Positions 7,550 to 57,820 of a stretch of 64,000 nt of DNA are shown piece after piece; within the stretch, counting starts at the first letter, position 1, and each line of letters starts with the position of its first letter. The notes under the pieces are model-generated. The model did not search any database. It was not told the origin of the DNA and was given only the letters and a program-made list of their open reading frames with translations. The position numbers and the translations under genes were made by a program. Origin of the DNA: Haliotis rubra (taxonomy: Eukaryota); the NCBI RefSeq assembly GCF_003918875.1, contig NW_025767358.1:558001-622000 (forward strand), written 5' to 3'.

Positions 7550-10500
7550 ATGTGGCTACGGGTTCTGTGTTCCTTGTTTCTCTGCGGAGCGGCGTTCTCC
7601 GACACAACCGTCACCATCTACAACGAGTGGCTCTCCCAGGGTGGACGTATGCATTTTGAAGTTGGAAGATGGAACAAAATTAATGGTCTCACCCAACAGA
7701 GCCTCATTCCAAAGATGAAAGCCGTCGGAGCGGCTGCCGGGCGTTGGGTGAATAGAGATCTGAGGGCCGATCTCTTTCCAAAGGTAAGTATAAAGAAACA
7801 TTCAGCTCCTATGTAGTCATATGATATTGTATTGTATGACTACTGAATCGGTCTATTGTAAAGAGAAGTATATTTGAAAGGGGCAGTGGCGTCGACTAAT
7901 GGTTACGGCGTTTGCTCGTCACGCTGAAGACCCGGGTTCGATTCCTTACAGGCAGCTTGGGTTATCCGGGGTAATAATGGCCTTGATTGTTAGCGCTATG
8001 AGCATACCTAGTTTGGCGCTATATAAATGGACACATTATTATTATTATTATTATTATGGGTACAATGTGCGAAGTCCATTTCAGTCCCGTCGTGTTATTG
8101 CTGGAATATTGCTAAATCACTCACTCACTCATATTTTAAAATGGGAATGAGTGACAGGGTGAGTGGGGCAGCTACAATTTCTTTGTATTGCTAGGGTGCA
8201 GATCGTTGATTATAGTTCAACTACTCAGGGACAGCATAATACTATTCACCGTATCCCTCTGCTACAAAGGTTTATTGGTTCTGGTCTGGTTAAGGTTAAG
8301 ACTTAGCAGCACCGTGGTATGAGAGTCAGAATCGACCTGAGTGGGGCCATAGCCACATCAGCTGGGATCTTTGACAGGCGGTACATTGTATAGAGGACCC
8401 GTAGGCCACGGCACTTCGCGAGACCTTACGTTGTTTAGTACTTCCGATGACAAACACCGTTTCAAACCTTTTCGAATGGGCTCATGGTTGTCAATGACAG
8501 TAAGGAACCGATAATCCTTTTATCCTAATATCTAATTTATGTCTAACAAACTATCATTAAAATATCGACACAGTTCACTATTTGAGGGAGGACTGCAGAG
8601 AAAGGGACAGCTTGGTGTGCGAGAAAGGATGGAGACGGCACAGCACAGGTTAATGAATCGGCACTTTGTCGGCACTTGTGCACGTGCTTCTCTAACACCT
8701 GGCTGTCCCTTTCTCTGCACTCCTCTCTCGTAACAAATAGTGAACTGTGTCAATATTTTAATGATAGTTTGTTAAACAACTTTTTTTAATTTTACGACAT
8801 AAATTCTGCAAACAAATCACAGAGTTGATCTGATATTTTGATTACGATCAGCGTTTCATTGAATATTATATGTTTATTAGTTTTTGAGTTAGATTGCAAT
8901 TCATCGGTCCACTTTTGAGCCAAACGCACTATTTTTATAAGCATGGTTGGACACTTGGGTCTGGTCTGGTAAAGCCATATTTGGCGGTCGCGCAATTTGG
9001 AGTCAGAGTTGGTTCTTGAATGTACGCTTGTCACCTGAAATTTCGTACCGGAAGTAAGCTCGGCCCCGTCTCGCATATCGCAAGTGAGCGGCGAGCCGGG
9101 AACCGGCTAAGTACCGGAAGTAGCGCCTCGCGAGACTTACAGGCCCTATTCGGGCAAACAATAACAGATCAGATTACCATATACAGTCGACCAACGTTGT
9201 GTCGAACTCTGATTACTCGGTTGTCTCGATATAACATCTCGGTCCCGATAAAATCCTTCATAATTTATCATTATTCAAGCTCTTTAACTCGATACGGATG
9301 TCTCCATATTTCGTATATCTCAGTATAATTTCATGGTTCCAACAAGCAAAATTACCCTTTTAACTCGATATTTGCAAAGAAACTCGATATTCACCTTCCT
9401 TTTATGGGCAAATATCCCTCTGAACTGAAGTTGTTTCCGCACGTTTACACACGATGCAGCGCGAATCAAAGAGATGCAGTAGTGTAAACTAATTAGGGCT
9501 CTAATGAAGGTGTCCCTTGTTTGTTATCTAATTAGGATTAATTAAGAAGGAATTAATTAGGGTGAGTGAATGAGTTATCCATACAAATTGTCATCATTCT
9601 TAATTGGTTGGTTTGTTCTTTTACGCCACACTCAGCAATATTCCAGCTACATAGCGGCGGTCTGTAAATAATCTAGTCTGGACCAGACCATCCAGTGATC
9701 AACAGCATGAGCATCGATCTACTCAACTGGAAACCGAGCCTGACCACCCAATCCCGTTAGTGTCCTCTTACGACAAGCATTGGTTACTGAATATCAATAT
9801 TCTAACCCCGACTTTCACGGGTAACAGCCACTGTAAACAGTTCTGATTTGAAGAGGCCATTCAACCATGACTTGAGTAAATACTGGATTGTGTTTGGTTA
9901 ATTAAATTATGCGATCATTCATTGGTCATTGAGGATCCTCAATTCTGTATCTCCCGTGGTGAAAGAATCACTCTAAAAAATGTCCTGCTTGAATGTGTTG
10001 ATTTTTCAATGACAAGGGATAACTATTTCAAAGCGCCGTCTACGAAGGATCTCTTTTAAAAATATTCATTTAATTCTTGATTTTTTAAAAGAATTTCAAT
10101 TGGTTAATAATGTGGTAGTATATTGTTAGATGTATGTATGTTAATGTATAACTGGTATTGTATAACTGAAGTTGTTAGTGAGTGAATCCTGACACAGGGT
10201 CAAAGTATTTGTGAAATCATTGTCTTCCTGAGAGAGGCGTAAGTCCTAAAACATAAGAAATTCTATCATATTAAGTCTACCAGCTATTTAATCGTGCGAT
10301 TTTGGGGGTTTTAAGCGATGGCTAAATTTGAGCACAGGGATGGTGTGAATCCACCTAGGGTGTAAGTTACAGACCAGCTAGTTTCACTTCCATCTGTAAT
10401 AATGGGTTCTTTTCCTGTCCTTCACTGACATTTTTTTTTATAATGCAACTTTATAAATCACGAATGTATAAATTCTTGCTAATCACGATATGGCTGGAAT

Positions 10501-13053
10501 ACTGCAGATGTGACTATATACTATTTAACTCTCTCTCACCCACTCTTCATATGGGGGCTATTGTGTAGCTTAGTGGTTAAAGTGTTCGATCGTCACGTCC
10601 AAGACCCGGGTTCGAATCCCCACATGGGTACCATGTCTGAAGGTCATTTCTGGTGTCTCCGCTGTGAGACTGCTGGAATATTGCTAAAAGTGGTATAAAA
10701 CTAAAACTAACTCTTCATATGACAAATTCCTCTTGTATTATTGTCGTCCTCTTTTCAGTGGCCCCAAAGCTCTAGTCACCACGGGTTTCCAGACCCCAGC
10801 TATCTCCAAGACCATACCATGCAGGCCAAGACATTCGCAAATTATATGATCCAACTGAAGAACTATGGGAATTACATTGACGACATGGTCTGGAACATAG
10901 AAGGTGAGTGAGTGAGTTAATATTTAACGTCATATCGGCAATATCTCAGCCATATTGTGATGAAAACAGGCGATGGACAGTAAAAATAGTAGAGTATCAC
11001 AGATATGAATATACAACTAAACATTTTAATTAAAAAAACACAATGCAATAAAAAACACAGGATACAGATCGCCAACAACGGAAGGTAGATCACCATACTT
11101 GGGGCGATGGGGACTTAAAGTACCGTTTCTGGAACATAGAAGGTTTGAGATGACATTTAAATCATTTCGAGACGTTTATGGGAAAACTGCAATCTGTAGA
11201 GCAGATATATGGAACATGTTTTGAGTTAAGATCATAAGGCTTCAATTATTGCACCGGGGGTTGATTTTGGGAATCTCATTTCGCGCCCCAATCTCTTTCG
11301 GCAATGAACGTATATTTGACGTCTAGTTGCATGTATTTACATCTTCACCAATCCACTCTCTCTCTTTCACACATCAAGTAGTTTATAATGCGATGAGCTT
11401 AATTTAAAATTCTCTGACAGGGAAGGTTGCCCAGTGGTTACAGCTTTGGCTTGTCACGTCGCAGAACCGTGTTCGATTCCCCTCGTGGGTACAATGTGTG
11501 AATCGCACTTCTGGTTATTGCTGGGATATTGCTAAAAGTGGCGTAAAACTAAACTCACTCACTAAGCTGACTGGGACGGTTGTTTCTTTGCAGGTCTTCA
11601 CTGGCCAAGCTGGATTGATAAATCTCAGCATCTTGATAAATTCCCCAACAACCTTGACGCTGCATCAGAGTTTGTGTCCCTAATGATTCAGAGTGCCAAG
11701 GACTACACAGGAGGACACCTTCCCTCTATCTTTGAACCTCTCAATGAACCTGATTGGGTCGAAAAGTACATCCCCCCAGAAACGTGTACCGATTTCCACA
11801 AGGCCGTCGCCGACAAAGTGAGAAAGAAGTTTGGAATCAAAGTTAGCGGACCATCGTACACTAGTATGGCCTTACGACAAGCAGATGAAAATGATTTTGC
11901 CTTCTGGAAGAGAACTGCAAAGTTTCTTGACATGTCTCTTGATCACTTGGACTTTTTCTCTTTCCATTCCTACAACTACCTGACGGACGTATCAGGTAAA
12001 AGCTACTTGGGCATCAACGAAGCTCGTCTTTTTGCTTCTCTTGACATGGTGGAGAATTATGCTCATATCAAGAAAGGAAAAAGTGTTCAGTTAGTTAACA
12101 CTGAATTTGGATTAGGCTTAGATAACCTTCAAGGCGTTGGCCCAGATTTTGAAAATGGAATGACGGATTTTCAGACAATTTATCAAGCAAACGGTTTCTT
12201 GTGTTCTTTCTTTAACCTGAGAGAGGTGATGGACAGAGCTACAATCTTCCTCCTCTCTAATGAACAATACCCAGGTCATACTTCCCTTCGCAATTCCTTA
12301 TTTACGATGGATGGCCATGCCCTTAATGTGACAAAATACTTCACTTTTTGGAAAAACCTTGTTTATGATCACAGGTTTCTCCGATTCTCAAGTGAACTCA
12401 ATGGGAAGGAGAGAACAGTTTCACCGCTTGCCCTTGCAAACCCCCACACCAAAGAGCTGGTAGTACTTCTCCACAACTTTGGCAATAAATTTGAGAATGT
12501 AAAACTGGACTTCCCCAATAACTGGCTCGACCCTTCTACAGGCGAAGAAACATGTGTTGTATTAAAAGATGGTTATCCAGCTATTAATGCTGATTTCAAG
12601 TTTGACAGGCATAAACTGCATGGCACTGTTGGTCTCCCTGCAACATCAACCTGCTTCTACAAGTTTAAAACCAACTACAACTTCAACGGAATACGCACAG
12701 ACAATCAGCGCACATACTACGGCAGGAACATGCAAATCAAAATCATTAATGGACGTGCACAGACAACCGTCACTCTACCGAGCACTGGTTATCATGAGGG
12801 TCATCTTAGAGTGGGCATCAGCCGAGGGAAGAATTTCAATACCAAACCGAAATCCGTTGTGTTCAATGGTCAGACTTTGTCTTCAAGTTACATGCTGTAT
12901 GATGCAATGGGCACGCAAGGGAAAACAAACTGGAACGTGTGGGAATTCGCGGTCCCTCCGTCAAAAATCACCAAATCCAATTCCGTCACCTTATCCTTTG
13001 ATGGAAACGATGGATACGTGACCTCCGTTGGGCTCGCTGTTGGAAAAATTTAG
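7550..13053 (+). CDS. Secreted GH86-like beta-porphyranase/agarase, copy 1 (3 exons, 612 aa)
   Basis: Exons 7550-7783, 10759-10903, 11594-13053 with GT-AG introns (phases 0 and 1) splice into an open 1839-nt frame. Signal peptide MWLRVLCSLFLCGAAFS. Motifs FEPLNEP (E178, 11746-48), LDFFSFHSY, VNTEFG (E297, 12103-05) and C-terminal LRVGISR...NSVTLSFDGNDGYVTSVGL match my recollection of bacterial GH86 porphyranases. Confidence 0.88.
7880..8131 (+). mobile_element. tRNA-SINE family C interrupted by an (ATT)n-tailed L2-like 3' fragment (~7949-8056)
   Basis: SINE head to 7948 and tail from 8056 flank a segment ending GCGCTATATAAAT...(ATT)n. Confidence 0.65.
8540..8931. mobile_element. Foldback element remnant: ~85-bp inverted arms (8544-8776) plus a terminus of the 25394 MITE family
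   Basis: TAACAAACTATCATTAAAATAT.GACACAGTTCACTATTTG recurs in inverted orientation at ~8734-8775. Confidence 0.65.
9606..9823 (-). mobile_element. Retroposon family A copy (intron 1 of copy 1)
   Basis: Aligns to 1-245 with an internal deletion. Confidence 0.8.
9930..10545 (+). mobile_element. Nimb-LINE 3' fragment (ORF2 C-terminus + 3' UTR)
   Basis: Translates EDPQFCIS..ERITLKNVLLECVDFSMTRDNYFK, homologous to ORF 26151..26351. Confidence 0.7.
10553..10712 (+). mobile_element. tRNA-SINE family C
   Basis: TAGCTTAGTGG A box and GGTTCGAATCC B box. Confidence 0.75.
10906..11127 (-). mobile_element. Nimb-LINE 3' UTR fragment inserted at the exon 2 splice donor of copy 1
   Basis: 17-bp TSD TCTGGAACATAGAAGGT at 10889-10905 and 11128-11144. 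Confidence 0.85.
11420..11563 (+). mobile_element. tRNA-SINE family C, diverged (intron 2 of copy 1)
   Basis: B box GTTCGATTCC, shared body and tail. Confidence 0.7.
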
Positions 13054-20924: not shown

Positions 20925-23900
20925 ATGTTTCTACAAGTTCTGAACACTTTGTTGCTGTTGGAATCGGCGTTTTCTGACACAACTGTCACAATCTACAACG
21001 AGTGGCTCTCCCAGGGTGGACGGGTCAATTATGAAGTTGAACGATGGAACAACGTAAATGGGCTCACCCAACTGAGCCTAATTCCAAGTATGAAATCTAT
21101 CGGAGCGGTTCCTGGGCGTTGGGTAAACAGAGACCTCAGAGATAATCTCTTTGTAAATGTACGTATGAAGTAAAAACATCTTTCATACAAAAATATAGTT
21201 CGTGATTGATGTGATTCATGATTCATGTCCTTGTTTGCCTATTGAATCGGTATATTGTAAGGAGCAGTCTTTTTACGCAGCTTAAATGGGTTCGGAGTGA
21301 CAGTGTGTGTTCTATACTGGACAAAATAAGTTAGGGATATTGGTATTTTTATGATTGATATTTTATCAGTGTGTCAATGAATAAATAGATCATTATTAAT
21401 AATTTCAAAATTTACATATATCCCTAACTATTTTTGTCCAGTATATTTTCGCAAGGTGCAGATAGTTGCTCATAGTTCAGTTATGTATTTACTGGTTCAG
21501 ATTGAATTATTCAAAGTGACCCATTGGTGCAGGTGTTTGATAGTTCTGGTCCAAGCAGAATTTAGGGTACTGCTTAGTAAAGATGACCGTGAAGATCCGG
21601 GTTAGAATATTGGCCTTCAGTAACCCTTCTTGTCGTAAGAGGTGACTAACGGGATCGGGTGGTCAGACTCACTGACTTGGTTGACAGATGTCATCGTATC
21701 CCAATTGCGTAGATCGATGCTCATGATTTTGATCACTGGATTGTCTGGTCCATACTTGATTATTTACAGACCGCCGCCATATAGCTGGAATATTGCTGAG
21801 TATAACAAACCAACCAACCAACCAACCAATCCCTCTTCGATACTCATTCGCTATCATGGTCTCCCCACACAATCGCAGACCTCCTAAAATCACTTTTCTT
21901 AGGTCTTTGGCGGAGTTCAATGTTAGAAAAGCAGAAACGACTGCAAATGGGACAAACTAACCAATTCTGTCGTAAGTTCCAACAACTTCTTCGTTTGAAC
22001 TGGTCCTGCTTCCATGATCAGTTGTGTCAGTAGAAATTTCATTTGTAAGGAGGTAAGGAAAATATCTGAATGTAAGATTTCCAATTGAGAAATAATTGTA
22101 TTTACTAAAAAATCAGAAATGTAACACATCTCTAAAATGTCAATGGGAAATAGAAAATAAACTGACTCTGTTGCATATTTTCTGTTGCTCTGGTGTAACT
22201 GACCCCAAGAATATATGACACTATTTATGGATTGCATCTTATCTTTTATTCAATCTGGTGAAAGAGCAAGAATAATCTCTGAAACGTCGTGAGACAGAAG
22301 TTCTTATTCATAAAACGTGTCATTTATCCATGTTCATCCAACTTCTACACGCCTTGGAAGAACTTAGCTGACTCCAAGTATAAAACTGATCAAAGCGACC
22401 CATGGCACAACATAAAGGAATACACCATTATACTGTTTTTCCTTGAACACCCATTTACAATTGTATCATTAAAATGTTCATTTCTTTTACTTTTGTGAAA
22501 AATATTGTCCTTCAGTGGCTAAAAATGCAATTTAGATGAATGCCATAACAAACGTAACTGTTTATCTTTTAATTATTCACAGAGAAAACTGTTGGTTTAA
22601 TCTTATATTGTTTTATTCAGTGGCCTCAAAGCCCTAGTCACCATGGCTATCCGGACCCCACCTATCTACAGAACCAACCACTGCAGAGACGGACATTTTT
22701 GACGTATCTCAAACAATTGCAAGACTATGGGAATTACATCGCCAATATGGCCTGGGAAATGAAAGGTTTGTTCTTTTAATCCTCTCAAAGAGTGACTGAG
22801 TGAAATAAACTTTAACGTCACCACTGTTTCAGCCATACAGTGACGATAAACGTTTTGCATTCATAATAAATGCAAGTTGTTAAAAATCCAGTCATCAAAG
22901 GATTGACAATGAGTTGAGTTTTACATATGGTGTTTAAACCTGGCATGTAAATCTGAAACCTTTGAAGACAATATAAAAACAGGCTATAGGTCGTCAACAA
23001 GTGGAAGATCACGACACTAGGGACCATGGGGACTTACAGCGCGTTTTCCTATCTGCATGGACCATAGTTGAATTTGCATCATCCCTTCAAATATGACTAA
23101 TTTAGCCCCAAAATAAAACGAATACATATTCTATGAATACAAGTGTGTAGAAGTACATGGGAAAAGTATGCCATTAACTAATACATATAACTACTAACAG
23201 AACAGACGTGAAACAAATTTTGCGGTGTTTCAAGCTGAACTGAGAGCACTCTTTTCTCATTGGTAGGTAGTCCAATTTCCTTCTTACCTCTCTGAAAGCA
23301 GGTTACTCATAATCATTTATAACAACAGTTGAAAATGGCAGTAACTTAACCTGTCTACACAAACTTATTAACGCTTAAAGTGGGTGAACACCCAATGAAT
23401 ATTTCTTTCGTAATATTTCTCTTACCGTATATGCTGGTTGTTTACAGGTCTCTCCTGGCCCAGCTGGATAGATAAGTCTCAGCATCAAGACAAATTCCCA
23501 AACGATGTTGACGCTGCATCCGAGTTTGTCTCACTGATGGTTCAGAGCTGCAAGAACTACACATCAGGACGTCTTCCTTACATATTTGAAGTCATCAATG
23601 AACCTGATTGGGATGAAAAGTATATTGATCCACAAACCAATATAGATTACCACAGGGCCGTCGCCGACAAACTGAAATCAAGATTTGGAATGAAAGTGGC
23701 TGGACCATCATTCACTAGTATGGCCTTACGACTAGCAGATGAAAATAACTTCATCTTCTGGAAGAAAATTGCTAACTTTATGGACATGTCTCTTGATCAC
23801 TTGGACTTTTTCTCTTTCCATTCCTACAATCATATTTTCAATGCATCAAGCGAATCCTACTATGGTATCAACGAAGACCGTTTGTTTGCCTCTCTTGACA

Positions 23901-24913
23901 TGGTTGAGAATTATTCTCATCTCAAGAAAGGAAAAAGTGTTCAATTAGTAAACACTGAATTTGGAGTAGGTTTACTTACCATGGGCATTGCGCCCGATTT
24001 TGAAAATGGACTGATAGACTTTGAGACAATTTATCAAGCAAACGGTTTCATGTTTTCTTTCCTTAACCTCAGGGAGTTTATGGACAGAGCTACAGTGTAT
24101 CTCCTCGCAAATGAACAATACCCTGGCCATACTGCCCTTCGGAATTCCTTATTCACAAAAGATGGTCATCCACTTAATGCGACCAAATTCTTTCTATTTT
24201 GGAAAAACTTTATTGATGATCAAAAGTTTCTCCGAGTCTCTAGTCAATACGATGGAGAGGAGAAAATAGTCTCACCACTTGCACTAGCAAATCCTCACAC
24301 CAATGAGATGGTAGTTCTTCTCCACAACTTTGGCAGTGAATTTGAGAATGTAAAACTGGACTTCCAAAACAACTGGATCAATCCTTCTTCGGGTGAAGCG
24401 ACATGTATTCTGTTCGAAAAGGGTAAGCCAGCTGTTCATGCAGATTACCATTTCAACATATCCGGGGTTAATGGCACCGTCGGTCTTAATGGATCATCAA
24501 CATGCTTCTACAAGTTTCAAACCAACTACATCTTTAACAGATTACACACAGATAATCAGAACACATACTATGGCAGGGACATGCTCATTCCCATCAGCAA
24601 TGAACGTGCACAGACAACCATCAGTGTACCGAGCTCTGGCTACCATGAGGCCAATCTTAGAGTAGGAATTAGTCGTGGCATGAGAGACAATACAAAACCT
24701 AAGGCAGTTGTATTCAATGGTCAGACGTTGTCGTCAAGCTATATGTTGTTTGATTCTATGAAGACAACAAAAATGAGGACAACAACATGGAACGTGTGGG
24801 AGTTCATGGTACCAGCATCGCTGGTGAAAACAACCAACACCGTCAGCATGACCTTTGATGGGGACGGTGGCAACGTGACTTCCGTTGCTCTTGTTGCAGG
24901 AAAACTTGAGTAA
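20925..24913 (+). CDS. Secreted GH86-like beta-porphyranase/agarase, copy 2 (3 exons, 614 aa)
   Basis: Exons 20925-21158, 22621-22765, 23448-24913, same exon 1/2 sizes and intron phases as copy 1, open frame. Signal peptide, FEVINEP and VNTEFG present. An in-frame ATG at 20904 is an alternative start. Confidence 0.88.
21315..21443. mobile_element. Tc1/mariner-type MITE
   Basis: TIR TACTGGACAAAA..AGTTAGGGATAT, TA flanks. Confidence 0.75.
21586..21830 (+). mobile_element. Retroposon family A copy ((AACC)n tail)
   Basis: Reverse complement of 1-245. Confidence 0.8.
22792..23135 (-). mobile_element. Nimb-LINE 3' UTR fragment (intron 2 of copy 2)
   Basis: Shared motifs GAAGATCAC...CTAGGGACCATGGGGACTTACAG. 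Confidence 0.65.
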
Positions 24914-29519: not shown

Positions 29520-32500
29520 ATGTTTCTACCGGTTCTGTGCACCTTGTTGTTGTGGGGATCGGCATTCTCTGACACAACAGTCACAATCTACAACGAGTGG
29601 CTTGCCCAGAGTGGACGTGTCGATTATGAAGTTGAACGATGGAACAACGTCAATGGACTCATAGAATCCTACCTTGCTCAAAAGATGAAATCTATCGGAG
29701 CGGTTCCAGGGCGGTGGGTAAACACTGATCGGAGAAATGGTCTCTTTGCAAATGTAGGTATTAAATATAACCGTCTTCAAAGCAAAACAGATTTTGGAAG
29801 TGATATGGTTTTGTGCATGCTATGTATACCTACCAAATCAGAATATTGTAAGGAGCAGTATTTTTACCTCAAAATCGGAATGAGACAGTTGGAGTGTATA
29901 AGCTTAAGTATCTAGGGTGTTTTTGTCACGGTGTAGTTCATTGCTTATGGTTCGTTCTAGTCTATGCCAGTTTTTGATATTACAGAAACAGTCCAGTGTT
30001 GAAGTTCAGCTTTAAATAAATAGCTATATGATAACCTGTTTGTAATCTAGTTTAATAATACCTTTTCAAAACTTTTGTTTGTTCAAACAATACCGTCTGG
30101 GGAACCTTAATGTTCTTTTAATCCTGACTTTGAAGCCTTGCACATCTGATCAAAAAGTTTAAAGCAATAGTAAGTTTGTTTGTGCTATGTGATTAGTCTG
30201 CCCATCTCTTCAATTATCATTCAATATCATCACCATGTTGACGGCGGCTCGTGGTTAGGTGAGGTGAAATGGGGTTTAAGATAGTACTTAAGAATATTTC
30301 GCTCATATGACGTGCATGCATGTATTTATGTGGCTGCTTGTACTAGCCCAGACTTAAGCTGGTTTTATAAAACTAGCCCACTGAGATAAGCGTGCATACC
30401 TAACTCAGACACATTATACTGACTCCGAGCTGACCAGTCCTTGTTGTACCCAGTAATGCCGAGCGCCAGAAAGGGACCAATAAGTACCATATTTTAACGT
30501 CTTTTGGCATGACGCGACCGGGGATCGAACCGGCGACCTTCCACTCTCCGGGCGGATGCTCTAACCACTACATCATGGAGGTAGTCACACAGTCGTGGTC
30601 CTCTGGTCATGTCTTTTCTTAGGCCTTCTGTGGAACACAATCTCAGGTAATCAGATAGTCTGTGGTGGAGTTGTTTGAGATAACAATTTCTGTCTAACTG
30701 TCAACAACGTCATTAATTACAAAACCTAGCCTGAACAGGTATGGCCGCCAGCTCAGATGTGTCAGTACACATGAAGTCATCGTAGAGCAGTTAACCACAG
30801 TATCTGAATATGCGCTTTTCAATGGAGAAATACTTGTCGTTTAAGGTGTACAACAGAAGAATACTTGAAGTCAGACTTGACATAATAATACCCCACGAAT
30901 TGTCATGTTGAGACCTGTATTGTGGTGAAATTACACTGTGATACATTAATATTTCGCAGAATTACGGCGTGTTGAACATGCATGATTTATGCAAAAATAG
31001 TCCTAAGTCAGATATAGGTTGTTCTGCCTCTGGACGGGCCTGACTTAGGTCTTTTTGCCTCAAAACCCTTCGTAAGGAGGTGAAATTAGGTCTGGAGAGC
31101 ACATGTCACGCTGGAAGGAAGCTCTGAGAAAACTGAAACAATGGTTTGATTAAAACTAGTAAGCATTGACCAGTTCTTTCAAATATAAGTGTCACATCAT
31201 ACTATAATAGTGATTTTGTGTGAAAATGACAATATATGTACATAAACACACTCAAATGTGGTTTCAGGCACAAATTCATTTGTAACATACATAAAATATG
31301 TATAAAAAAACACATTCAGTCAGTAGTAAAATTATCTTATAAACGTATTTTATAGTAACATTTAATCGTAGTCATCACACAAAGGACGCACATAGTGTTA
31401 ATTAATATATATGCAGAATAGGGTTCACAGAGAACATTACGTTTTGGGCTAAATAATGGAATCTGTATCTCCCATTTTCCTGATCCAATTTACCCCGATG
31501 AGCTCGTTTCTCATTCATCTCATGATACTGATTACTGTAATGACAGTAAAGCTACTCTTCAATTTAATGTAGACTGTAATGTAGTTTGCTTCAGTTTGAC
31601 TGTGTTGAATTTGGAGACTGACAGACATTCAGTTCCAGTGTGTTCCAGTTCTACCCTCAGTAAAGTCAGATGGACATGTTCTGCAATGTTAACGTCACTG
31701 TCCCGAACAAAGCAGAAATGATGGTAAAGAGGTAAGTCTTGAGACCACGTCTAAAAGACTCAGAGTGTCGGCCATGTTCTGTACACGCCAGAGTACAACA
31801 AGGAGACTTACAATAGTAAAATATTTCCGGATGTTGCTGGTGTTCCTCAACTGTAGAGAACACGTCTTGGTTATTCGACTGATCTGACTATCCATTGAGA
31901 GGTCCGCGTCTTTGACACTCTCTGGCACTGGTACCTCCAGTTACCAAGGTAGTGAGCCCGGACTTCAGACTGATTAGGCTTGAAGAGTGAGTGTCATCTG
32001 CATATATGTGCTTGTTGATCTCATGTACCTGAATGATTGAGCTAAGTGCCTTGGTGTACAGCGTGAATAGAACTGGACCCAAAACCAACCCCTGTGGCAC
32101 ACCACGTGATAGATTCAAGGGAGCTGAATAGACACCATCGATATATACCTATTGTTACCAATTCCGCAGATATTTTTCGAACAAGGACTGGTAGGAATCA
32201 TATAGAAAGAACCATAAAACACTGGTCGAGATATTCCTCTAACAAGGATGTTTACTTCCTGGTTCTGAAATAACAGAATGATACAATGTAGCAACTTGTA
32301 TTTAGCACTTATTACCATGAAACAACATTTATGAATATCCCATTATAATGAAACTACAGCAATAAGTTCACAATACATGACACTGTCATGAAATGACTGC
32401 TCCCAAGTTTCACGAAACTTTGAAACAGTCTAGCAAAACTACAGATAGTAAATTCCATGAATTACCACTGAGCATGTTGACTTAATATTGATTCTAAAAC

Positions 32501-35500
32501 TACAAACTGACTCTATAATCCTGACATCTTAACAGAAATCTGCCATATAGTTACAAAACACAATGTATCAGAGCGCACCATTACCACGAAAATAGGATAC
32601 AGTTTTGCACGTGACCAAATAATTGAACATTCCTTGAATTGCAAAAATACTCTGAAAATAGTATAATACACCGCCACAAACATGGGTATATTATAAGAGT
32701 GACATTTGTACCTGAAGAGTGCATCTCGACCATCTCTGAAACTTCAACATTCAATATATACTTGCTCTAAACAAACTCCTTTTTGACCATCGCGGGTCAC
32801 TCATGCGCTCGCTCGCAGTAAACTTTTTACAGCCAGGGAGCATCTATTGTATCAAATGTCAACGACTTAAGCCACTACTACCATGTATCTACAGTCAGAG
32901 AACTTAACTACTGGTCAAATAAAGATATTATTCCAAACTAGTACACAAAATGCAAAATACTGCTGCACATTTCCTGACTAGAAACAATTCTGCAAAATAT
33001 TAGGATTACATCAGGGAAAACCAAACAAATTGTAGTCATGACCACACTAAATATACACTATTAGTCTCAAAAACCAAAACAGTTACAACATAATAAGACT
33101 GTCTGCATGGTATTCCATAATACCAATCTACATGATAAAAATGACAAGCTCTTTATACTGACACACAAACAAAACTAACCATAGCAGAATAATTCAGGTG
33201 CAATCTAGCCTTTAGTCAACATGTAATATTATTCCAAACAAGGACCATACACTACCATTGAGAAAGACGTCATCCTTGAGGCACCTGAGTGGCATCTGTT
33301 GGTCTATGGTATCAAAGGCCGCCCAAAAATCTAACAGTACCAGGAGGCCAACATTACCACTGTCAATACCACATCTAAGGTCGTTGAGGACTTTCAATAG
33401 GGCTGTCTCCGTACTGTGTTTAGGACGGTATGCCGATTGGAAAGGCTCGTACAAGGATCAGACGAGAGGATAACAGACGTATTGCTTGCTGACAAGAACA
33501 GTAGAGAAGACAGGGGCTATTCTTGAAATGCTTTGATTGAACAAAAATGTTGCAGATATTGTAATCCATAGGAATGAATTGTATATTACAGTGTGATGTT
33601 CAGAATGTTTTATGTTTGAATAAATCTATCACTCATTATGATGGCTGATGGGTGCACTGCAGTCTCTAAACCGATGGAAAAGCGTTACTAGTATCCTCTA
33701 AGGTTTAGATGATTTTCAGAACAAAATACATCGTTTTAAAACGCAATATTCCTCTCAAAGGTTCAGCATGTGCAATGGGTACATGCATCTTGTTTTGTAT
33801 CTTTCTCTTAATTTCTCGAAATGATTTTATGCATAATGACTTAGGTTGTTTTGCGTCTCAATTTTAGTGACTTAGGTCATTCTGCCAGAAAACGGAAATT
33901 CAAGAATCAGTTTTGCCTTCATAATTCTGAATATTTATGAAACAAAATTAAAGTAAAGCACAATACATTTATCCCATCATGCAAGTCTAACCAAGAAAAC
34001 AAACACGGTTTCCCAGTAGTTTTCAAGATACAGGTTTTTCGTCTCTCCTGATACCCTACAAAAGGGACTTAGGTCGTATTGCTCCTCATCCCTTTACTTT
34101 GTCAATGGGAAAGCTTAAAGAATGATTACCTGTGTCCTGCATATTTTGTGTTGCTGTGGTACAGCTGATCCCAAGTGAAAATCCATGGTGCATCATGATC
34201 AAAGAGAAATCAAGAAACCGCTTTTTCTATAGATTCTATTACAATACCATTTACATTTGAAATGCTTTTCTGAGCTTATTGTCATTTTAATTCATTTGAA
34301 GGGACGCTGTACCAAACGTACATGTAATTGTTTCACTTCTAACTCTAAATTTAGTACTATATTCATTCCTTTTATTCAGTGGACTGAAAACCCAAGTCAC
34401 CATGGTTATCCAGACACCACCTATCTCCAGGACCATACTTTCCAGCGAAGGACATTTCTAACATATGTGCAACAATTGCAATACTTTGGGCCTCACACCA
34501 CCAACATGGTCTGGGGAATGAAAGGTTTCTCAAGTCATTAAATCCTTTTAAAGACGTTTATGAAAAAAGCTTTTTTACATTTTTTTTTGAAAGATAACTA
34601 TAGGGAGAACACGGGACAAACCCATTTCACTGTGCTTAAACTTGAACTTACAGGTTTCACCTTACATTAGTCGAGTCACATGTTGATCTTCACGTCCCTG
34701 GAAGCAGATTACCACTTAACCTATGCACACGCATTAACGTTTAAAGTAGTTGAACACCCAATGAATATGCTCTACTTATGTTTTTACTTACAACATATGT
34801 TGCTTCCTTATAGGTCTCGCCTGGCCCGGCTGGATATATAAGTCTCAGCATAAAGATGTATTCCCAAACAACGTCAACGCTGCATCAGAGATGGTGTCGC
34901 TGATGGTCCAGAGCTGCAAGGACTACACAGGAGGACGCCTTCCTTACATATTTGAAGTCATCAATGAACCTGACGTGGACGAACAGTATATTGACCCACA
35001 ACTCAATATAGATTACCACAGGGCCGTCGCCGACAAACTGAAATCAAGATTTGGAATGAAAGTTGCCGGACCATCATACACCAGTATGGCATTACGACAA
35101 GCAGATTTAAATAACTTTAGCTACTGGAAGAGAACTGCTAAGTTTATGGACATGTCTCTTGATCACTTGGACTTTTTCTCTTTCCATTCCTACAACCATA
35201 TGAATGATGCAGCAGGTCACTCCTACTCTGGCATTAACGAAGATCGTTTATTTGCTTCTCTTGACATGGTGGAGAATTATTCTCATATCAAGATAGGAAA
35301 AGGTGTTCAGTTAGTTAACACTGAGTATGGACTAGGTTTAAATAACCTAGGCCTTGGGGCCAATTTTGAGAATGCCATGTCAGACTTTCAGACAATATAT
35401 CAAGCAAACGGTTTCATGTTTTCTTTCCTTAACCTGAGAGAGTTTATGGACAGAGCTACCGTGTTTCTTCTTTCAAATGAACTATACCCAGGTCATACTT

Positions 35501-36279
35501 CCCTTCGGAATTCCCTATTTACCACTGATGGTCATCCCCTTGAGCCAACCAAATTCTTCCTGTTTTGGAAAAACTTTATCAATATTCAAAAGTTTCTCCG
35601 GGTATCTAGTCAACACAATGGACAGGAGAGAACAGTTTCACCACTTGCCCTTGCAAACCCCCACACCAAAGAGATGGTAGTTCTCCTCCACAATTTTGGC
35701 AATAAATCAGAGAATGTAAAACTGGACTTCCCCAACAACTGGATCAATCCTTCTTCAGGTGAGCAGACATGTATCCTGTTCGAAAAGGGTAAGACAGCCG
35801 TTCATAGCGATAGCCATTTTGACAGGTCTAAGCTTCATGGCAGTGTCGCACTTCCTGCAACATCAACCTGCTTCTACAAGTTTAAAACCAACTACATCTT
35901 TAGCAAAATACACTCAGATAATCAGAATACATACTATGGCAAGAACATGCTCATCCCCATCAGCAACGGACGTGCACAGACAACTATCGGTGTACCGAGC
36001 TCTGGCTACCATGAGGCTCATCTTAGAGTGGGAATTAGTCGAGGCAGGACTCATACTACAAAACCTAAGACAGTTGTGTTTAATGGTCACACTTTGTCTT
36101 CTAGCTACATGTTATTTGATGCTATGAAAACTCAAAGCAAAAGGAAAACAAACTGGAACGTATGGGAGTTCGTGGTCCCTGAATCACTGGTGAAAACAAC
36201 CAACACCGTCAGCATGACATTTGATGGGGACGGTGGCAGCGTGACATCCGTTGCTCTCGTTGCAGGAAAACTTCAGTGA
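29520..36279 (+). CDS. Secreted GH86-like beta-porphyranase/agarase, copy 3 (3 exons, 614 aa)
   Basis: Exons 29520-29753, 34380-34524, 34814-36279, GT-AG introns, open frame. Signal peptide MFLPVLCTLLLWGSAFS, FEVINEP and VNTEYG present. Confidence 0.88.
30256..30586 (-). mobile_element. Second V-SINE-like copy (intron 1 of copy 3)
   Basis: Aligns end to end with 14833-15180. Confidence 0.7.
31690..32115 (-). mobile_element. L2/CR1-group LINE RT fragment
   Basis: GVPQGLVLGPVLFTLY and YADDT motifs. Confidence 0.75.
33245..33455 (-). mobile_element. L2/CR1-group LINE RT fragment (upstream part of the same RT)
   Basis: QSAYRPKHSTETALLKVLNDL...LVLLDFWAAFDTID. Confidence 0.75.
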
Positions 36280-45025: not shown

Positions 45026-48000
45026 ATGTTTCCTCAGGTTCTTTTGACTCTGGGTTTGTGGGGGTCAGCGTTTTCTGACACAACCGTCACAATCTACAAC
45101 GAGTGGCTTTCCCAGGGTGGACGTGTCAATTATGAAGTTGAACGATGGAACAACGTTAATGCACTCACCCAAATGAACCTGATTCCAAAGATGAAATCTA
45201 TCGGAGCGGTTTCTGGGCGTTGAGTAAACAGAGACCTGAGAAAAGGTCTCTTTGCAAATGTACGTATGTAAACACCATCTTCAATGCTAAACGATTATGA
45301 ACGTGATATGATTCATGCATGATTTGTGTGTCCAGTGAATCTGTATATTGTCAGGAGCAGTATTTGTACATATGTTTAATGGAAATGAGACAATTAGAAT
45401 GTATGACGGTATAAGACTATATGTTTTCATGGTGCAGATCATTGCTCACAATACATACTAGACAATGCAACTTATGTTTTGTTAAATTATAAAATGTCCG
45501 AACGAGTCATGCCGCCATGACCATCAGCTCAAAAGTATAGATCAATTCATTTGGAAGCAGGTTAGGACAATATCTGAACATGAGATTTTCAATTGAAAAT
45601 AACTGGCTCTTTTTTTTAGAACATTAACGTTAGAAATAATATCATGACAATATACACTCAGTGCCATTATTGAAGGGTCATGTGTCTTTTTTTTGCATTG
45701 CTACGAATCAATTTCATATTATGAAATATAAGTAATGAGAAGTCAATACTGTTTAAAACCCTGTTGACAGAAGGCACCATAGAACACATTAGACTACGCA
45801 CATGTCTCATTATTGAGAAGTTTAAGCTATAGAGTGTTTCAAAAACATGATCATTTTGATAAATTCCGAAAATACTGTCAATGTCTGTATCGTGGAAACG
45901 CAGCATTTTGCCCTGTATTCCACGAGAAAGTGCGACTTCCCATGCACAGATTTAGGCTATAAATGTCAACTGTAGTCTCACCCTGACATCATGGTTTCTG
46001 ATACGAAATGAGACGTTTCCTGACGGTAGCAGAGAGAGGTCAAGCAAGCTGGTCACAGTCAACGACAAGCTGCAAATCACTTCAATGTGAGTCAAAGTGT
46101 CATTTGGTTGCAAAGGTTTCAAGCCACGGGATCGATGGAATATGCGAGAAGACCAGGCCGACCTAGAGTTACCAGTGCAAGGCAAGACAGATATATGGGA
46201 AACGTCGCTTTACGTTACCGATTCGTGACCTCCAGTGACCTTCAGACAGAACATTATAATGTTCATGGTGTCAGGATAAGCAGGAACACCATTCGACGCC
46301 GATTACGTGCCCACTCAGTGGGCTCCGTTCAAGGCGACCAGCAGTCCGTCCACCACTTCTGCAACGTCACAGACATGCATGTTTAGCCTGGATCAGTCAC
46401 GGTCGTTGGAATCATCGTCAATGGTCGAACGTGATCTTTACAGATGAACGCCGGTTTAATTTGTCTATTAATGATGGTCATTGGAGAATATTCTGCAGAA
46501 GAAGTGAACGGTTCACTGATGCTACAGTTGTCACACACAATAGGTTTGGTGGCGGGTCAGTCATGGGTTGGGCCGGTATCATGGCTACAGGAAGAAAGAT
46601 CCCAGCTTAATATTATTGATGGAAATTTGACTGGTCAGTGNNNNNNNNNNNNNNNNNNNNNNNNNNNNNNNNNNNNNNNNNNNNNNNNNNNNNNNNNNNN
46701 NNNNNNNNNNNNNNNNNNNNNNNNNNNNNNNNNNNNNNNNNNNNNNNNNNNNNNNNNNNNNNNNNNNNNNNNNNNNNNNNNNNNNNNNNNNNNNNNNNNN
46801 NNNNNNNNNNNNNNNNNNNNNNNNNNNNTTTTTGCAAGCTACGCATGGATTTTATGGTCGTGACCCTCTTCTACAGGACGATAATGCCAGACCTCACAGA
46901 CACAACTGCAGTCACTGATTATCTTCAGCAACAGGGTGTGGAACGGGTGGACTGGCCGGCATGTTCACCAGACCTTAATCCAATCGAGCATGCATGGGAT
47001 GAACTTGGCAGACGTGTTTACAGACGTCACCCTGCTCCACAAGAGTGTCTTCGGAGAGTTCATGTGCAAGAATGGGAGGCTATTCTTTATGAACTTGATG
47101 AGAAGCATGAGGTATCGGTGTAACTCTGTCCAGGACCAGAGAGGCGGCCACATGGTCATGGACTCTATTGTTGCGACTTTCAGTGTTGTGGGTATCCCTT
47201 TATTAGATGTGCGTGAAGATGCAGTCCTGATCCTTTCCTCACAGCACAGCACCGAACACTCTCCAGACTGTCTTTTCTTTCTATAATCTTGTCACAGCAT
47301 ACTCCACTTTGCATTATATTACCTTATTGCTACATAACCCTTCAATAATGGCACTGAGTATATAAAAAAGTAACATATTATTAATGAGGAAAAGAAGGAA
47401 TACATGTTAGGTACGTATCTGCTATTGCTGTGGTACAGCTCACCTCAAAGTATGATCAAAGCCACAAACTGTGCACTTTGAATGAGTCTGGCAGAAAACC
47501 ACTTTTTTCATTCGATCAGTAAACAGTAATATATTTTCCTTTGCTGTATGTTTTTGCCATTCAAAGGCTGCATATTTATTTAAAAGGACGCCGTAACAAA
47601 TGTACCTGTTTATCTTTTAATTCTTCACATGGAACTATGCGATATTATTTTTTCATTCAGTGGACCGAAAACCCTCATCACCATGGTTATCCGGACCCCA
47701 CCTATCTCCAGGACCGTTCTCTCATGCGACAGACCTTTCTAACATATGTGCACCAATTAGAAAACTTTGGGCCTCACACCGCAAACATGGTCTGGGAAAT
47801 GAAAGGTTTCTCCAGTCATTTAATCATTTTCAAAAGTCAAACAGGTGTCAAACACTGTGTTTAAAGTTGAACTAACAGCAGCATCATTCATCGGTCGGTA
47901 TTAGGAGTCCAATGTTGATCCTCACGTCCCTGAAAGCATATTACACGTGATTTATCATGTAACCCACAGTCAACAACATAACCTACACACACTCATGTAC

Positions 48001-49549
48001 GTTTAAAGTAGTAACATTCGTTGAATTTGCTTAGCCTAACTTTTCACTTAATTTCACCTACAATAGATAATGCTTTTTTACAGGTCAGGCCTGGCCCGGC
48101 TGGATCGATAAGTCTCATCATCATGGCGGATTCCCAAACAATGTTGACGCTGCATCAGAGATGGTGTCACTGATGGTTCAGAGTTGCAAAGACTACACAG
48201 GAGGACGCCTTCCTTACATATTTGAAGTCATCAATGAACCTGACTGGTACGAAGATATTATTGATCCACAAACGAATATAAATTACCACAGGGCTGTCGC
48301 CGACAAACTGAAATCAAGATTTGGAATGAAAGTTGCCGGACCGTCGTACACCAGTATGGCATTACGACAAACAGATGAAAACAACTTCAGCTCTTGGAAG
48401 AGAACTGCCAACTTTATGGACATGTCTCTTGATCACTTGGACTTTTTCTCTTTCCATTCCTACAACCGTCTGAATGATGCATCGGGTCACACCTACTCTG
48501 GCATCAACGAAGCTCGTCTGTTTTCTTCTCTTGACATGGTGGAGAATTATTCTCATATCAAGAAAGGAAAAAGCGTTCAGTTAGTTAACACTGAATATGG
48601 ATTAGATTTACTTAACCTAGGCCTCAGTCCCAGTTTTGAGAATGCAATGACAGATTTTCAGACAATATATCAAGCAAATGGTTTCATGTTTTCTTTCCTT
48701 AACCTGAGAGAGTTCATGGACAGAGCTACAATATATCTCCTCGCAAACGAGCAATACGCAGGTCACACTTCCCTTCGGAATTCCTTATTTACTGATGATG
48801 GTCATCCCCTTGAGCCAACCAAATTCTTCCTGTTTTGGAAAAACTTCATAAATATTCAAAAGTTTCTACGGGTCTCTAGTCAACACGATGGACAGGAGAG
48901 AATAGTTTCACCACTTGCCCTTGCAAACCCCCACACCAAAGAATTGGTAGTTCTTCTCCACAACTTTGGCACAAAAGATGAGAATGTTAAACTGGATTTC
49001 CCCAACAACTGGATCAACCCTTCTTCAGGTGAACAGACATGTATTCTGTTCGAAAAGGGTAAGACAGCTGTTCATCCCAATAACCATTTTGACAGGTCTA
49101 AGCTTCATGGCAGTGTCAGTCTTCCTGCAACATCAACCTGCTTCTACAAGTTTCAAACGAACTTCAACTTTGCTGGACTACACACAGATAATCAAAACAC
49201 ATATTATGGCAAGGGCATGATAATCCCCATCAACAACGGACATGCTCAGACAACTATCGGTGTACCGAGCTCTGGCTACCACGAGGCCCATCTTAGAGTG
49301 GGAATCAGTCGCGGCAAGTATACTACTACAAAACCTAAGACAATTGTGTTCAATGGTCGCACTTTGTCTTCAAGCTACATGCTGTTTGATTCTATGAAGA
49401 CATCAAACAAGAGGACAACAACATGGAACGTGTGGGAGTTCATGGTACCAGCATCGCTGGTGAAAACAACTAACACCGTCAGCATGACCTTTGATGGGAA
49501 TGGTGGCAGCGTGACATCGGTTGCACTCGTTGCAGGAAAACTTCAGTGA
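45026..49549 (+). pseudogene. GH86-like porphyranase copy 4, premature stop W66* (null allele, young pseudogene or base error)
   Basis: Exons 45026-45259, 47661-47805, 48084-49549. TGA at 45221-45223 where the other four copies have TGG (GRWVN). Splice sites, catalytic motifs and the rest of the frame are intact. Confidence 0.78.
45655..47360 (+). mobile_element. Tc1-like DNA transposon (defective) in intron 1 of copy 4
   Basis: TIRs (C/T)ACTCAGTGCCATTATTGAAGGG at 45655-77 and 47338-60, TA on both flanks; FTDE, QDDNARPH and WPACSPDLNPIEHAWDELGRR motifs; spans an N-gap. Confidence 0.87.
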
Positions 49550-56459: not shown

Positions 56460-57298
56460 ATGTTGTTACTGCTTCTGTGCTCCGTGTTGTGTGGGGCAGC
56501 GTTGGCTGACACAACCGTCGCAATCTACAACGAGTGGCTCTCCCAGGGTGGACGTGTCAATTATGAAGTTGAACGATGGAACAACGTTAATGGACTCACC
56601 CAATACTACCTTGTTCCAAATATGAAATCTATCGGAGCTGTTCCTGGGCGTTGGGTGAACAGAGACCTCAGAAAAGATCTCTTTGCAAATGTACGTATGA
56701 AGTAAAGCCATCTTCAATGCAAAAAGGATTTTGGACTTGATGTGATATGATTCGTACATGATTTGTATGCCTAGCGAATCAGTATATTGTAAGGAGCATT
56801 ATTTCTGTCTTAAAATCAGAATGAGACAGATGGAATGTATGAGCTGTTGTATCTGTATTTTTCACGGTGCAGTTCAGTGCTCATAATCCAAACACGTCCA
56901 TGCCAGCGTTATTTTATATATGTTAAAATAGCCAAGTCTGTTGTAACTGCTAACAACGTAATTATTTGTGGAAACCTCCTCTGAACGAGTCTGGCCGCCA
57001 TGACTGTCAGCTCAGATGGGTCAATGCAGATGAATTCCTTGGAAAGGAGTTAAGGACAGTATCTGAATAAGTGCTGTTAAAAAAATAACCGTCTTTTTCT
57101 GAACATTTAAGATATATAACAAAGGAATAATTTGTCAATGGAAAAACGAAAATGATTACCTGTGTGCTGCCTATTTTGCGTTGGTGTGGTACAGCTGATC
57201 TCAAGTGCAAATCCGATCTAAGCCACATCACATCACATGGTCAAAGAGTGTGCCATGAAATCACTTTTTCTGTTGATTCGTGGGGCGGTGGGGTAGCC

Positions 57299-57717: not shown

Positions 57718-57820
57718 TTCCCCACATGGGTACAATGTGTGAAGCTCATTTCTGGTGTCCCCCGCCGTGATATTGCTGGAATATTGCTAAAAGCGTCGTA
57801 AAACCAAACTCACTCACTCG
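57656..57820 (+). mobile_element. tRNA-SINE family C, full length
   Basis: Near-identical to 40981-41146. Confidence 0.85.

What the first reader, a model, noticed from the sequence alone, without database searches (positions are those of the whole stretch)
11594..13053. Possible bacteria-to-animal horizontal transfer with later intron gain
About 80% of the CDS, including both catalytic residues and the C-terminal domains, sits in one ~1.46-kb exon; the only two introns are 5'-biased. An intron-poor, 5'-intronised gene with bacterial-type domain architecture fits a domesticated HGT gene. Shared intron positions show that intron gain preceded array expansion.
Basis: inference. Interest (0 to 1): 0.85.

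Follow-up and report, generated by a model that had tools for sequence, protein, structure and literature searches.

The report
Ancient mollusc GH86 seaweed-enzyme gene
This 1.46-kb exon is the main exon of one of five tandem abalone genes for a secreted enzyme of a family (GH86) otherwise known from bacteria that digest red seaweed; the gene is very old in molluscs and its nearest relatives are in single-celled eukaryotes, so a direct bacterium-to-abalone transfer is not the best reading.

Summary
Window 11594-13053 is exon 3 (1460 of 1839 coding bases, 79.4%) of Haliotis rubra LOC124257191. It holds both catalytic glutamates and both C-terminal beta-sandwich domains. The only two coding introns lie in the first 21% of the coding sequence.

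The predicted fold matches all three solved GH86 enzymes over its full length (TM 0.74-0.81). The window holds five tandem copies: three read intact, copy 4 has a stop codon in exon 1, and copy 5 is frameshifted.

Both introns sit at the same alignment columns and phases in all five copies, in deep abalone paralogues, and in mussel, pearl oyster and chiton genes. Intron gain therefore preceded the array and the split of the mollusc classes. No other animal phylum showed the family.

The sister group of the mollusc genes is not bacterial. It is a small clade of unicellular-eukaryote genes (support 100/100): a choanoflagellate transcript, an intron-bearing metagenome gene, and a contig with eukaryote-type neighbours.

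Rooting is unresolved (AU p 0.365), and a choanoflagellate+mollusc grouping is not rejected (p 0.205). Ancient foreign origin remains likeliest, but a direct bacterial donor is not shown. No RNA or enzyme data were obtained. The scan had already noted this family on other DNA of this genome.

The parts
7550..7783 (+). Copy 1 (LOC124257191) exon 1: start codon, predicted signal peptide, start of the catalytic domain; 78 codons, phase-0 donor GTAAGT
7784..10758 (+). Copy 1 intron 1 (2975 nt), full of high-copy interspersed repeats
10759..10903 (+). Copy 1 exon 2 (145 nt), encodes the conserved GYxDP region; phase-1 donor GTGAGT
10904..11593 (+). Copy 1 intron 2 (690 nt)
11594..13053 (+). Copy 1 exon 3 (the finding): 1460 nt with stop; both catalytic Glu residues, rest of the (beta/alpha)8 barrel, two beta-sandwich domains
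20925..24913 (+). Copy 2: exons 20925-21158, 22621-22765, 23448-24913; reads intact by homology; same intron positions
29520..36279 (+). Copy 3 (LOC124257188): exons 29520-29753, 34380-34524, 34814-36279; intact
45026..49549 (+). Copy 4: exons 45026-45259, 47661-47805, 48084-49549; in-frame TGA at 45221 in exon 1 as assembled
56460..60257 (+). Copy 5: exons 56460-56690, 57995-58139, 58791-60257; frameshift near 58996-58998 and stops at about 59065-59140, so a pseudogene as assembled

Best explanation
The exon is the last and largest exon of an intact three-exon abalone gene for a secreted GH86-family enzyme. By homology it is a retaining endo-beta-galactanase of the agarase/porphyranase type: a signal peptide, a (beta/alpha)8 barrel with acid/base E178 and nucleophile E297, and two C-terminal beta-sandwich domains. 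It probably acts on red-algal galactans in the gut. It is the first of five tandem paralogues in the window. The family is endogenous to molluscs and old. Its two introns were gained once, before the first duplications of the family and before chitons, bivalves and gastropods diverged. The family has no counterpart in other animal phyla, so a single ancient acquisition on the mollusc stem lineage is the most likely origin. Its closest relatives are genes of unicellular eukaryotes, so the immediate source was more probably such a eukaryote, or a lineage shared with them, than a bacterium. Bacteria are the likely ultimate source of the whole eukaryotic clade. Shown here: the gene model, fold, catalytic residues, intron conservation, taxon distribution in the databases searched, and the sister group. 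Inferred: secretion, substrate, direction and timing of transfer.
For: Gene model and intron phases. Identical intron columns in five window copies, in the Haliotis paralogues P0070 and P0062, and in Mytilus, Pinctada and Liolophura. GH86 membership: PDB 5TA1 E 1.3e-12 over 445 residues; AlphaFold model pLDDT 89.5 with TM 0.74-0.81 to BuGH86, Aga86A_Wa and BpGH86A, against 0.5 or less for other clan GH-A folds; both catalytic Glu kept in copies 1-4. Integration in the host genome: host-like GC, repeat-filled introns, and DNA contigs from another 2018 study that are 95-99% identical and bridge all exon/intron junctions. Distribution: every named hit with E<1e-30 among 1.84 billion representatives is a mollusc, and profile searches name only Haliotis, Liolophura, Mytilus and Pinctada. 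The best bacterial-type hit has E 6e-22, which gives an alien index of about 48.8 when Mollusca is excluded. Sister group X: reciprocal BLASTP; trees with X+mollusc at 98-100 support. X is eukaryotic: GT-AG introns in L011; Kelch/DRC7, tubulin carboxypeptidase and Mucin4-C8-3/PAN neighbours in L010; a transcript from Diaphanoeca grandis, whose transcriptome study used four rounds of polyA selection (PMC6040629). No X relative was found in 185,579 prokaryote genomes with the two patterns tried.
Against: The GH86 tree is not reliably rooted. A distant outgroup puts the eukaryotic clade inside the bacterial GH86 sequences with only 81-94 SH-aLRT support, and the AU test does not reject bacterial monophyly (p 0.365). 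X is monophyletic and excludes the molluscs, so no sampled X lineage is the donor. A Diaphanoeca+mollusc clade, which vertical descent predicts, is not rejected (p 0.205). The organisms behind most X sequences are unknown, and the Picozoa label comes from a single-cell co-assembly. X and mollusc genes share no intron. No RNA-seq, protein or activity data were obtained.
Confidence: 0.45

Rival explanations
1. Vertical inheritance. A GH86-like gene was already present in the common ancestor of choanoflagellates and animals (itself perhaps acquired from bacteria). It was kept on the line to molluscs and lost in every other sampled animal phylum and in many mollusc lineages.
For: The sister group contains a choanoflagellate transcript. 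L011 resembles choanoflagellate genomes in its 56% GC and short GT-AG introns (the comparison rests on my own knowledge). The AU test does not reject Diaphanoeca+mollusc (p 0.205). Losses are clearly frequent, because the family is patchy even within molluscs. The GH13_1 amylases of bilaterians offer a similar patchy case that includes choanoflagellates (PMC7003070, abstract seen).
Against: It needs roughly a dozen independent losses across animals. No homologue was found in sponges, cnidarians, deuterostomes, ecdysozoans or other spiralians. X as sampled is monophyletic to the exclusion of molluscs and may include non-holozoans. No introns are shared between X and molluscs.
Confidence: 0.28
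2. One reading: a direct bacterium-to-mollusc transfer followed by intron gain. Group X would then be a separate acquisition by protists from the same, still unsampled, bacterial lineage.
For: The whole architecture is bacterial GH86 and is colinear across the intron sites. GH86 is diverse in at least five bacterial phyla. X and molluscs share no intron. The outgroup tree places the eukaryotic clade among bacterial GH86 sequences.
Against: No bacterial sequence is closer to molluscs than X is. This holds in an exhaustive search of 1.84 billion representatives, in profile searches and in pattern scans of 185,579 prokaryote genomes. X and molluscs share derived features absent from bacteria, namely the RW..HHG motif and the lack of an 11-residue insert. 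X+mollusc has 100/100 support.
Confidence: 0.2
3. Contamination or an assembly artefact: the gene is bacterial or protist DNA wrongly assembled into the abalone genome.
For: None beyond the unusual family.
Against: The gene has spliceosomal introns with canonical sites. Host repeats and a reverse-transcriptase remnant lie within and between copies. GC content is host-like. There are five tandem diverged copies (68.6-85.7% identity among the four readable copies). The family is present in chromosome-scale assemblies of four Haliotis species and in three other mollusc genera. Independent DNA contigs bridge the exon/intron junctions.
Confidence: 0.01

Closest known systems
Bacterial GH86 beta-agarases and beta-porphyranases: BuGH86 (PDB 5TA1/5TA0/5TA5), Aga86A_Wa (8H97), BpGH86A (4AW7)
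   Same: Same three-domain fold over the full length (TM 0.74-0.81). Same catalytic NEP acid/base Glu and the same nucleophile Glu, aligned to BuGH86 E322. BPA_C domain present.
   Different: Only 17-20% identity in the structural alignments. A eukaryotic signal peptide replaces the lipoprotein or T9SS signals. An 11-residue N-terminal insert is missing and an RW..HNG motif is gained. The gene carries two spliceosomal introns, sits in a tandem array in an animal genome, and has no polysaccharide-utilisation-locus context. Its substrate has not been tested.
Group X: GH86-like genes of unicellular eukaryotes (Diaphanoeca grandis transcript P0098; Picozoa single-cell assembly and marine metagenome P0080/P0220; P0225; P0362 on L011; P0180 on L010)
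   Same: Sister clade with 100/100 support. Shares N-terminal motifs and the NEP and SE(H/Y)G catalytic motifs.
   Different: Only 22-31% identity to molluscs. Either no introns (L005) or introns at other positions (L011). P0080 carries an extra GH3-like tail. The source organisms are largely unidentified.
Endogenous animal plant-cell-wall and algal-polysaccharide enzymes with disputed origins, such as animal GH9 cellulases (my own knowledge) and GH13_1 amylases in bilaterians (PMC7003070)
   Same: A carbohydrate-active enzyme with a patchy animal distribution, introns, and a debate between horizontal transfer and ancient vertical descent with loss.
   Different: I found no open paper describing GH86 in an animal genome. 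Here the family is confined to molluscs and is expanded to roughly 30 protein clusters in H. rubra (my rough count from the name columns).

Membership tests
Glycoside hydrolase family 86 (clan GH-A) | Significant sequence similarity to characterised GH86 enzymes over the catalytic and C-terminal domains | tested here: met
   5TA1 E 1.3e-12 over query residues 38-481 of the exon. Profile hits to hundreds of bacterial GH86 proteins.
Glycoside hydrolase family 86 (clan GH-A) | (beta/alpha)8 barrel followed by two beta-sandwich domains | tested here: met
   AlphaFold model with pLDDT 89.5 and pTM 0.90. The top seven Foldseek hits are the three solved GH86 enzymes at TM 0.74-0.81; the next families score 0.5 or less.
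Glycoside hydrolase family 86 (clan GH-A) | Catalytic acid/base Glu in the NEP motif and nucleophile Glu at the end of strand 7 | tested here: met
   E178 and E297 are present in copies 1-4 and in 98 of 105 aligned family members. The nucleophile aligns to BuGH86 E322. Five distant paralogues elsewhere have Ala at that position.
Glycoside hydrolase family 86 (clan GH-A) | Pfam domains Porphyrn_cat_1 and BPA_C | tested here: inconclusive
   BPA_C scores 30-45 bits, above its 26.2 cutoff. Porphyrn_cat_1 is not detected in P0001 and is only weak in the chiton P0052, although the model does show that beta-sandwich.
Glycoside hydrolase family 86 (clan GH-A) | Endo-beta-agarase or beta-porphyranase activity | not testable with these tools
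   No enzymology could be done, and no paper on an animal GH86 was found.
Bacterium-to-animal horizontally transferred gene | Absent from other animal phyla and outgroups | tested here: inconclusive
   No hit in non-mollusc animals. However, relatives exist in unicellular eukaryotes, including a choanoflagellate dataset.
Bacterium-to-animal horizontally transferred gene | Closest relatives are bacterial | tested here: not met
   The closest relatives are the eukaryotic group X. Bacterial GH86 comes next.
Bacterium-to-animal horizontally transferred gene | Recipient clade nested inside donor diversity in a rooted tree | tested here: inconclusive
   The outgroup tree nests it with 81-94 SH-aLRT support. 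The AU test does not reject bacterial monophyly (p 0.365).
Bacterium-to-animal horizontally transferred gene | Physically integrated in the host genome rather than a contaminant | tested here: met
   Introns, host repeats, a tandem array, several species' assemblies, and independent DNA contigs across the junctions.

The most novel reading that the evidence does not exclude
Molluscs and a set of marine unicellular eukaryotes, including a choanoflagellate, share a distinct eukaryotic subfamily of GH86. The gene may have been present in the common ancestor of choanoflagellates and animals and survive today only in molluscs. In that case a textbook-looking bacterial transfer would really be a vertical relic. 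Alternatively it is a rare protist-to-animal transfer.
Probability: 0.3. Interest if true: 0.75.

Novelty: new member of a known kind. Interest (0 to 1): 0.6.

Why it matters
Digestion of agar and porphyran by animals that eat red seaweed is usually credited to gut bacteria. Here the animal itself carries a large family of GH86 genes: roughly 30 protein clusters in H. rubra by my rough count, and five copies in this window alone. Abalone may therefore cut these galactans with their own enzymes, which matters for the evolution of herbivory and for aquaculture feeds. The case is also a useful caution for transfer screens. The alien index and the domain architecture both point to bacteria, yet the nearest kin are protists, one of them a choanoflagellate. 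The conserved introns date the gene to before the mollusc classes split.

Tried and rejected
RNA evidence: the only runs that hold the stretch turned out to be genomic DNA contigs, so splicing and expression remain untested here.

Scans with the group X alignment found nothing in prokaryote genomes, JGI metagenomes or viral contigs. That argues weakly against a bacterial or viral carrier of X, but only two peptide patterns were used per scan. The genome scan with mollusc motifs returned only distant non-GH86 clan GH-A relatives from Armatimonadota, Kiritimatiellia, Pirellulales and Clostridia. I used these as an outgroup.

Rooting and topology tests: rooting with that outgroup was inconclusive, and so was the test of Diaphanoeca+mollusc. 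Midpoint rooting falls on the long eukaryotic stem and was not trusted.

Neighbours of the Picozoa-type gene on L005 have no Pfam hits, so that contig's origin stays open.

Literature: seven searches, of which six looked for an animal GH86 and found no description. The seventh located the Richter et al. 2018 choanoflagellate transcriptome paper.

N runs at 17506-17641, 46641-46828 and 60436-60657 were left untouched.
Full report
**What is there.** The window comes from Haliotis rubra. The translated exon is 100% identical to residues 127-612 of LOC124257191 (P0001, 612 aa). I mapped that protein onto the window by brute force, requiring GT/AG splice sites and an exact translation. This gives three exons: 7550-7783, 10759-10903 and 11594-13053 including the stop. 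The donors are GTAAGT (phase 0) and GTGAGT (phase 1).

Exon 3 is 1460 of 1839 coding bases (79.4%). The two introns interrupt the coding sequence after codon 78 and within codon 127, which is the first 21% of the sequence.

**The tandem array.** tblastn finds five copies on the + strand. By homology their exons are as follows:

| Copy | Exon 1 | Exon 2 | Exon 3 |
|---|---|---|---|
| 2 | 20925-21158 | 22621-22765 | 23448-24913 |
| 3 | 29520-29753 | 34380-34524 | 34814-36279 |
| 4 | 45026-45259 | 47661-47805 | 48084-49549 |
| 5 | 56460-56690 | 57995-58139 | 58791-60257 |

- Copies 1-3 read intact.
- Copy 4 has an in-frame TGA at 45221.
- Copy 5 has a frameshift near 58996-58998 and several stops at about 59065-59140.
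- Exon 3 proteins of copies 1-4 are 68.6-85.7% identical, so the duplications are not recent.
- Exon GC is 0.42-0.43 and intron GC 0.40, against 0.386 for the window. There is no compositional anomaly.

**What the protein is.**
- Pfam finds only the BPA_C domain, the C-terminal domain of beta-porphyranase A.
- phmmer against the PDB gives Bacteroides uniformis GH86 agarase (5TA1) at E 1.3e-12 over 445 residues.
- An AlphaFold model built on a 37-sequence alignment has pLDDT 89.5 and pTM 0.90.
- Its top Foldseek matches are all three solved GH86 enzymes (BuGH86, Aga86A_Wa, BpGH86A), matched over the full length at TM 0.74-0.81. Other clan GH-A folds score 0.5 or less.
- The acid/base Glu (E178, LNEPDW) and the nucleophile Glu (E297, NTEFG) are conserved in copies 1-4 and in 98 of 105 aligned family members.
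- E297 aligns with the position mutated in 5TA0, which is titled BuGH86 E322Q.
- The N-terminus looks like a eukaryotic signal peptide. This is by eye only and was not tested.

The most likely mechanism, inferred from family membership, is a secreted retaining endo-beta-galactanase acting on agar- or porphyran-type galactans of red algae. Blacklip abalone eat red algae (my own knowledge).

**Introns.** The same three-exon layout, with a phase-0 and then a phase-1 intron, is found in six genes:
- Mytilus californianus (L001);
- the chiton Liolophura sinensis (L002);
- Pinctada imbricata (L009);
- two deeply diverging Haliotis paralogues (P0070 on L007 and P0062 on L008);
- copy 1 in the window.

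In a joint alignment the junctions fall at identical columns, 141 and 202. Exons 1 and 2 are colinear with the N-terminal part of the bacterial GH86 catalytic domain, including the GR and EDPxRPGYxDP motifs. The introns therefore interrupt conserved catalytic-domain sequence and do not join shuffled modules.

That is correct but understated: it preceded the earliest duplications in the family and the split of Polyplacophora, Bivalvia and Gastropoda.

**Distribution.**
- An exhaustive phmmer search of 1.84 billion representative proteins gave ten clusters below E 1e-30, then a gap to E 6e-22.
- All named members of the top tier are Haliotis or Mytilus.
- Word-index searches with the exon and with a mollusc profile name only four Haliotis species, Liolophura, several Mytilus species and Pinctada.
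- No other animal phylum appears, and neither do many well-annotated molluscs. The family is therefore patchy even within Mollusca.
- The next tier has the bacterial GH86 architecture, Porphyrn_cat_1 plus BPA_C. One member checked, P0077, has an unmistakably bacterial genomic context.
- A profile search names only bacteria: Bacteroidota, Gammaproteobacteria, Planctomycetota, Verrucomicrobiota and Calditrichota.
- With Mollusca excluded and no other metazoan hit, the alien index is about 48.8. This uses the E-values and is a heuristic only.

**The unexpected sister group.** Five clusters among the best non-mollusc hits cover the N-terminus better than the bacterial proteins do. I call them group X.

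| Member | Source |
|---|---|
| P0080/P0220-P0222 | marine metagenomes and a EukProt Picozoa single-cell co-assembly |
| P0085/P0225 | NCBI and Logan assemblies, unnamed |
| P0098 | EukProt Diaphanoeca grandis, a choanoflagellate transcriptome |
| P0102/P0362 | JGI metagenome |
| P0180 | ENA metagenome |

- Relatedness: X members hit molluscs at E 1e-15 to 1e-30, but the four bacterial GH86 proteins compared only at about 1e-5 to 1e-17. Their best non-X hits are all molluscs.
- Trees: X+mollusc is recovered with SH-aLRT 98-99 in the quick trees. In the careful IQ-TREE run (LG+C20+F+G4 by PMSF) it has UFBoot/SH-aLRT 100/100, with X at 99/98 and molluscs at 100/100.
- Shared derived features: X and molluscs have an RW..H(H/N)G motif and lack an 11-residue bacterial insert.

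**X is eukaryotic.**
- The L011 gene is broken by canonical GT-AG introns, for example GTGAGT...CAG at about 4727-4926.
- The neighbours of the L010 gene are a Kelch/DRC7-type protein, a 1087-aa tubulin-glutamate carboxypeptidase, and a Mucin-4 C8-3/PAN protein.
- The Diaphanoeca transcriptome study describes and tests four rounds of polyA selection to remove bacterial RNA (PMC6040629). That EukProt EP00040 is this dataset is my own knowledge.
- Pattern scans found no X relative in 185,579 prokaryote genomes, in JGI metagenomes or in IMG/VR.
- The introns of L011 are not at the mollusc positions, and the L005 gene has none.

**Rooting.** Without a root, the tree is a three-way split between the eukaryotic clade and two bacterial clans. 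I used distant clan GH-A relatives recovered from prokaryote genomes as an outgroup. With them, the eukaryotic clade falls inside the bacterial GH86 sequences, next to the P0077 group, with SH-aLRT 81-94 on 229 columns. The AU test does not reject bacterial monophyly (p 0.365).

A Diaphanoeca+mollusc grouping, which strict vertical descent would predict, is also not rejected (p 0.205). The phylogeny therefore cannot choose between three readings:
- transfer into the mollusc stem from an X-like eukaryote;
- parallel transfers from an unsampled bacterial lineage;
- vertical descent from a choanoflagellate-animal ancestor with many losses.

I rank these 0.45, 0.20 and 0.28. The ranking rests on the number of losses that vertical descent requires and on the absence of any bacterial sequence closer to molluscs than X is.

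**Not contamination.** The gene has canonical introns packed with high-copy host repeats. A reverse-transcriptase remnant lies between copies. The five copies are diverged from one another. The family is present in chromosome-scale assemblies of four abalone species and three other mollusc genera. Contigs from another 2018 study, 95-99% identical, bridge every exon/intron junction of copy 1. Those runs are DNA, so I have no independent evidence of expression or splicing.

**Novelty.** Six full-text searches found no paper describing a GH86 gene in an animal genome. RefSeq's automatic names already say "beta-porphyranase A-like".

Earlier notes of this scan on other DNA of the same genome had already described GH86 arrays, had concluded that molluscs acquired the family long ago, and had noted the Ala-for-Glu paralogues. 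My results agree with them.

New here are the exact conservation of both introns across three mollusc classes, the eukaryotic sister clade that includes a choanoflagellate, and the finding that neither nesting within bacteria nor vertical descent can be decided on present data. I rate it a new member of a known kind: a patchily distributed carbohydrate-active enzyme in animals, probably of foreign origin. Interest is 0.6.

Noticed in passing
window 45221-45223: Copy 4 has an in-frame TGA in exon 1 where the other copies have the conserved Trp of the GRW motif. It is either a pseudogene or an assembly error.
   Followed up: partly
window 58990-59140: Exon 3 of copy 5 has a frameshift near 58996-58998 and a shifted stretch with several stops. 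Residues 126-194 of P0012 (LOC124289987, annotated on another contig) are 100% identical to 58790-58996, which may indicate a haplotig or a duplicated assembly.
   Followed up: partly
window 26528-27196 (- strand): A 222-aa ORF with a reverse-transcriptase (RVT_1) match lies between copies 2 and 3. It is a retroelement remnant.
   Followed up: partly
window 2703-3881 (+ strand): A 392-aa ORF upstream of the array has no Pfam hit and no similarity to the GH86 genes.
   Followed up: partly
window 7874-8060, 8622-8808, 9557-9743, 10492-10678, 10866-11052, 11427-11613: Parts of introns 1 and 2 of copy 1 show enormous summed contig depth. Joints link about 8116, 10690 and 11540-11546, which suggests copies of one interspersed repeat family. 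One copy abuts the exon 2 donor (GTGAGTGAGTGAGT) and another lies just upstream of the exon 3 acceptor.
   Followed up: no
P0069, P0070, P0217, P0218, P0342 (other Haliotis loci; L007 for P0070): A deep paralogue group keeps the acid/base Glu but has Ala at the nucleophile position (IIFSAHGL). It still has the same two introns. These may be pseudo-enzymes or galactan-binding proteins.
   Followed up: partly
L010 1-9738: This 27% GC, intron-poor contig from ENA ERZ26692669 carries a truncated X-type GH86-like gene next to a tubulin-glutamate carboxypeptidase and a Mucin-4 C8-3/PAN protein. It comes from an unidentified compact eukaryote.
   Followed up: partly
L003 6001-7359 and L004 6001-7590: Two low-coverage, gene-poor contigs of metagenome ERZ26168041 carry exon-3-like ORFs 54-55% identical to the mussel protein P0054. 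In the trees, P0058 (L004) groups with Pinctada. They are probably DNA of an unsequenced bivalve within a metagenome.
   Followed up: no
P0074 and P0075 (Mytilus coruscus, Mytilus edulis): These gene models, named CHST1 and DDE-1 domain protein, contain GH86-like fragments. They are probably chimeric annotations or transposon-disrupted copies.
   Followed up: no
P0076 (1329 aa, metagenome): The best bacterial-type hit to the abalone protein carries two GH86 modules in one polypeptide.
   Followed up: no
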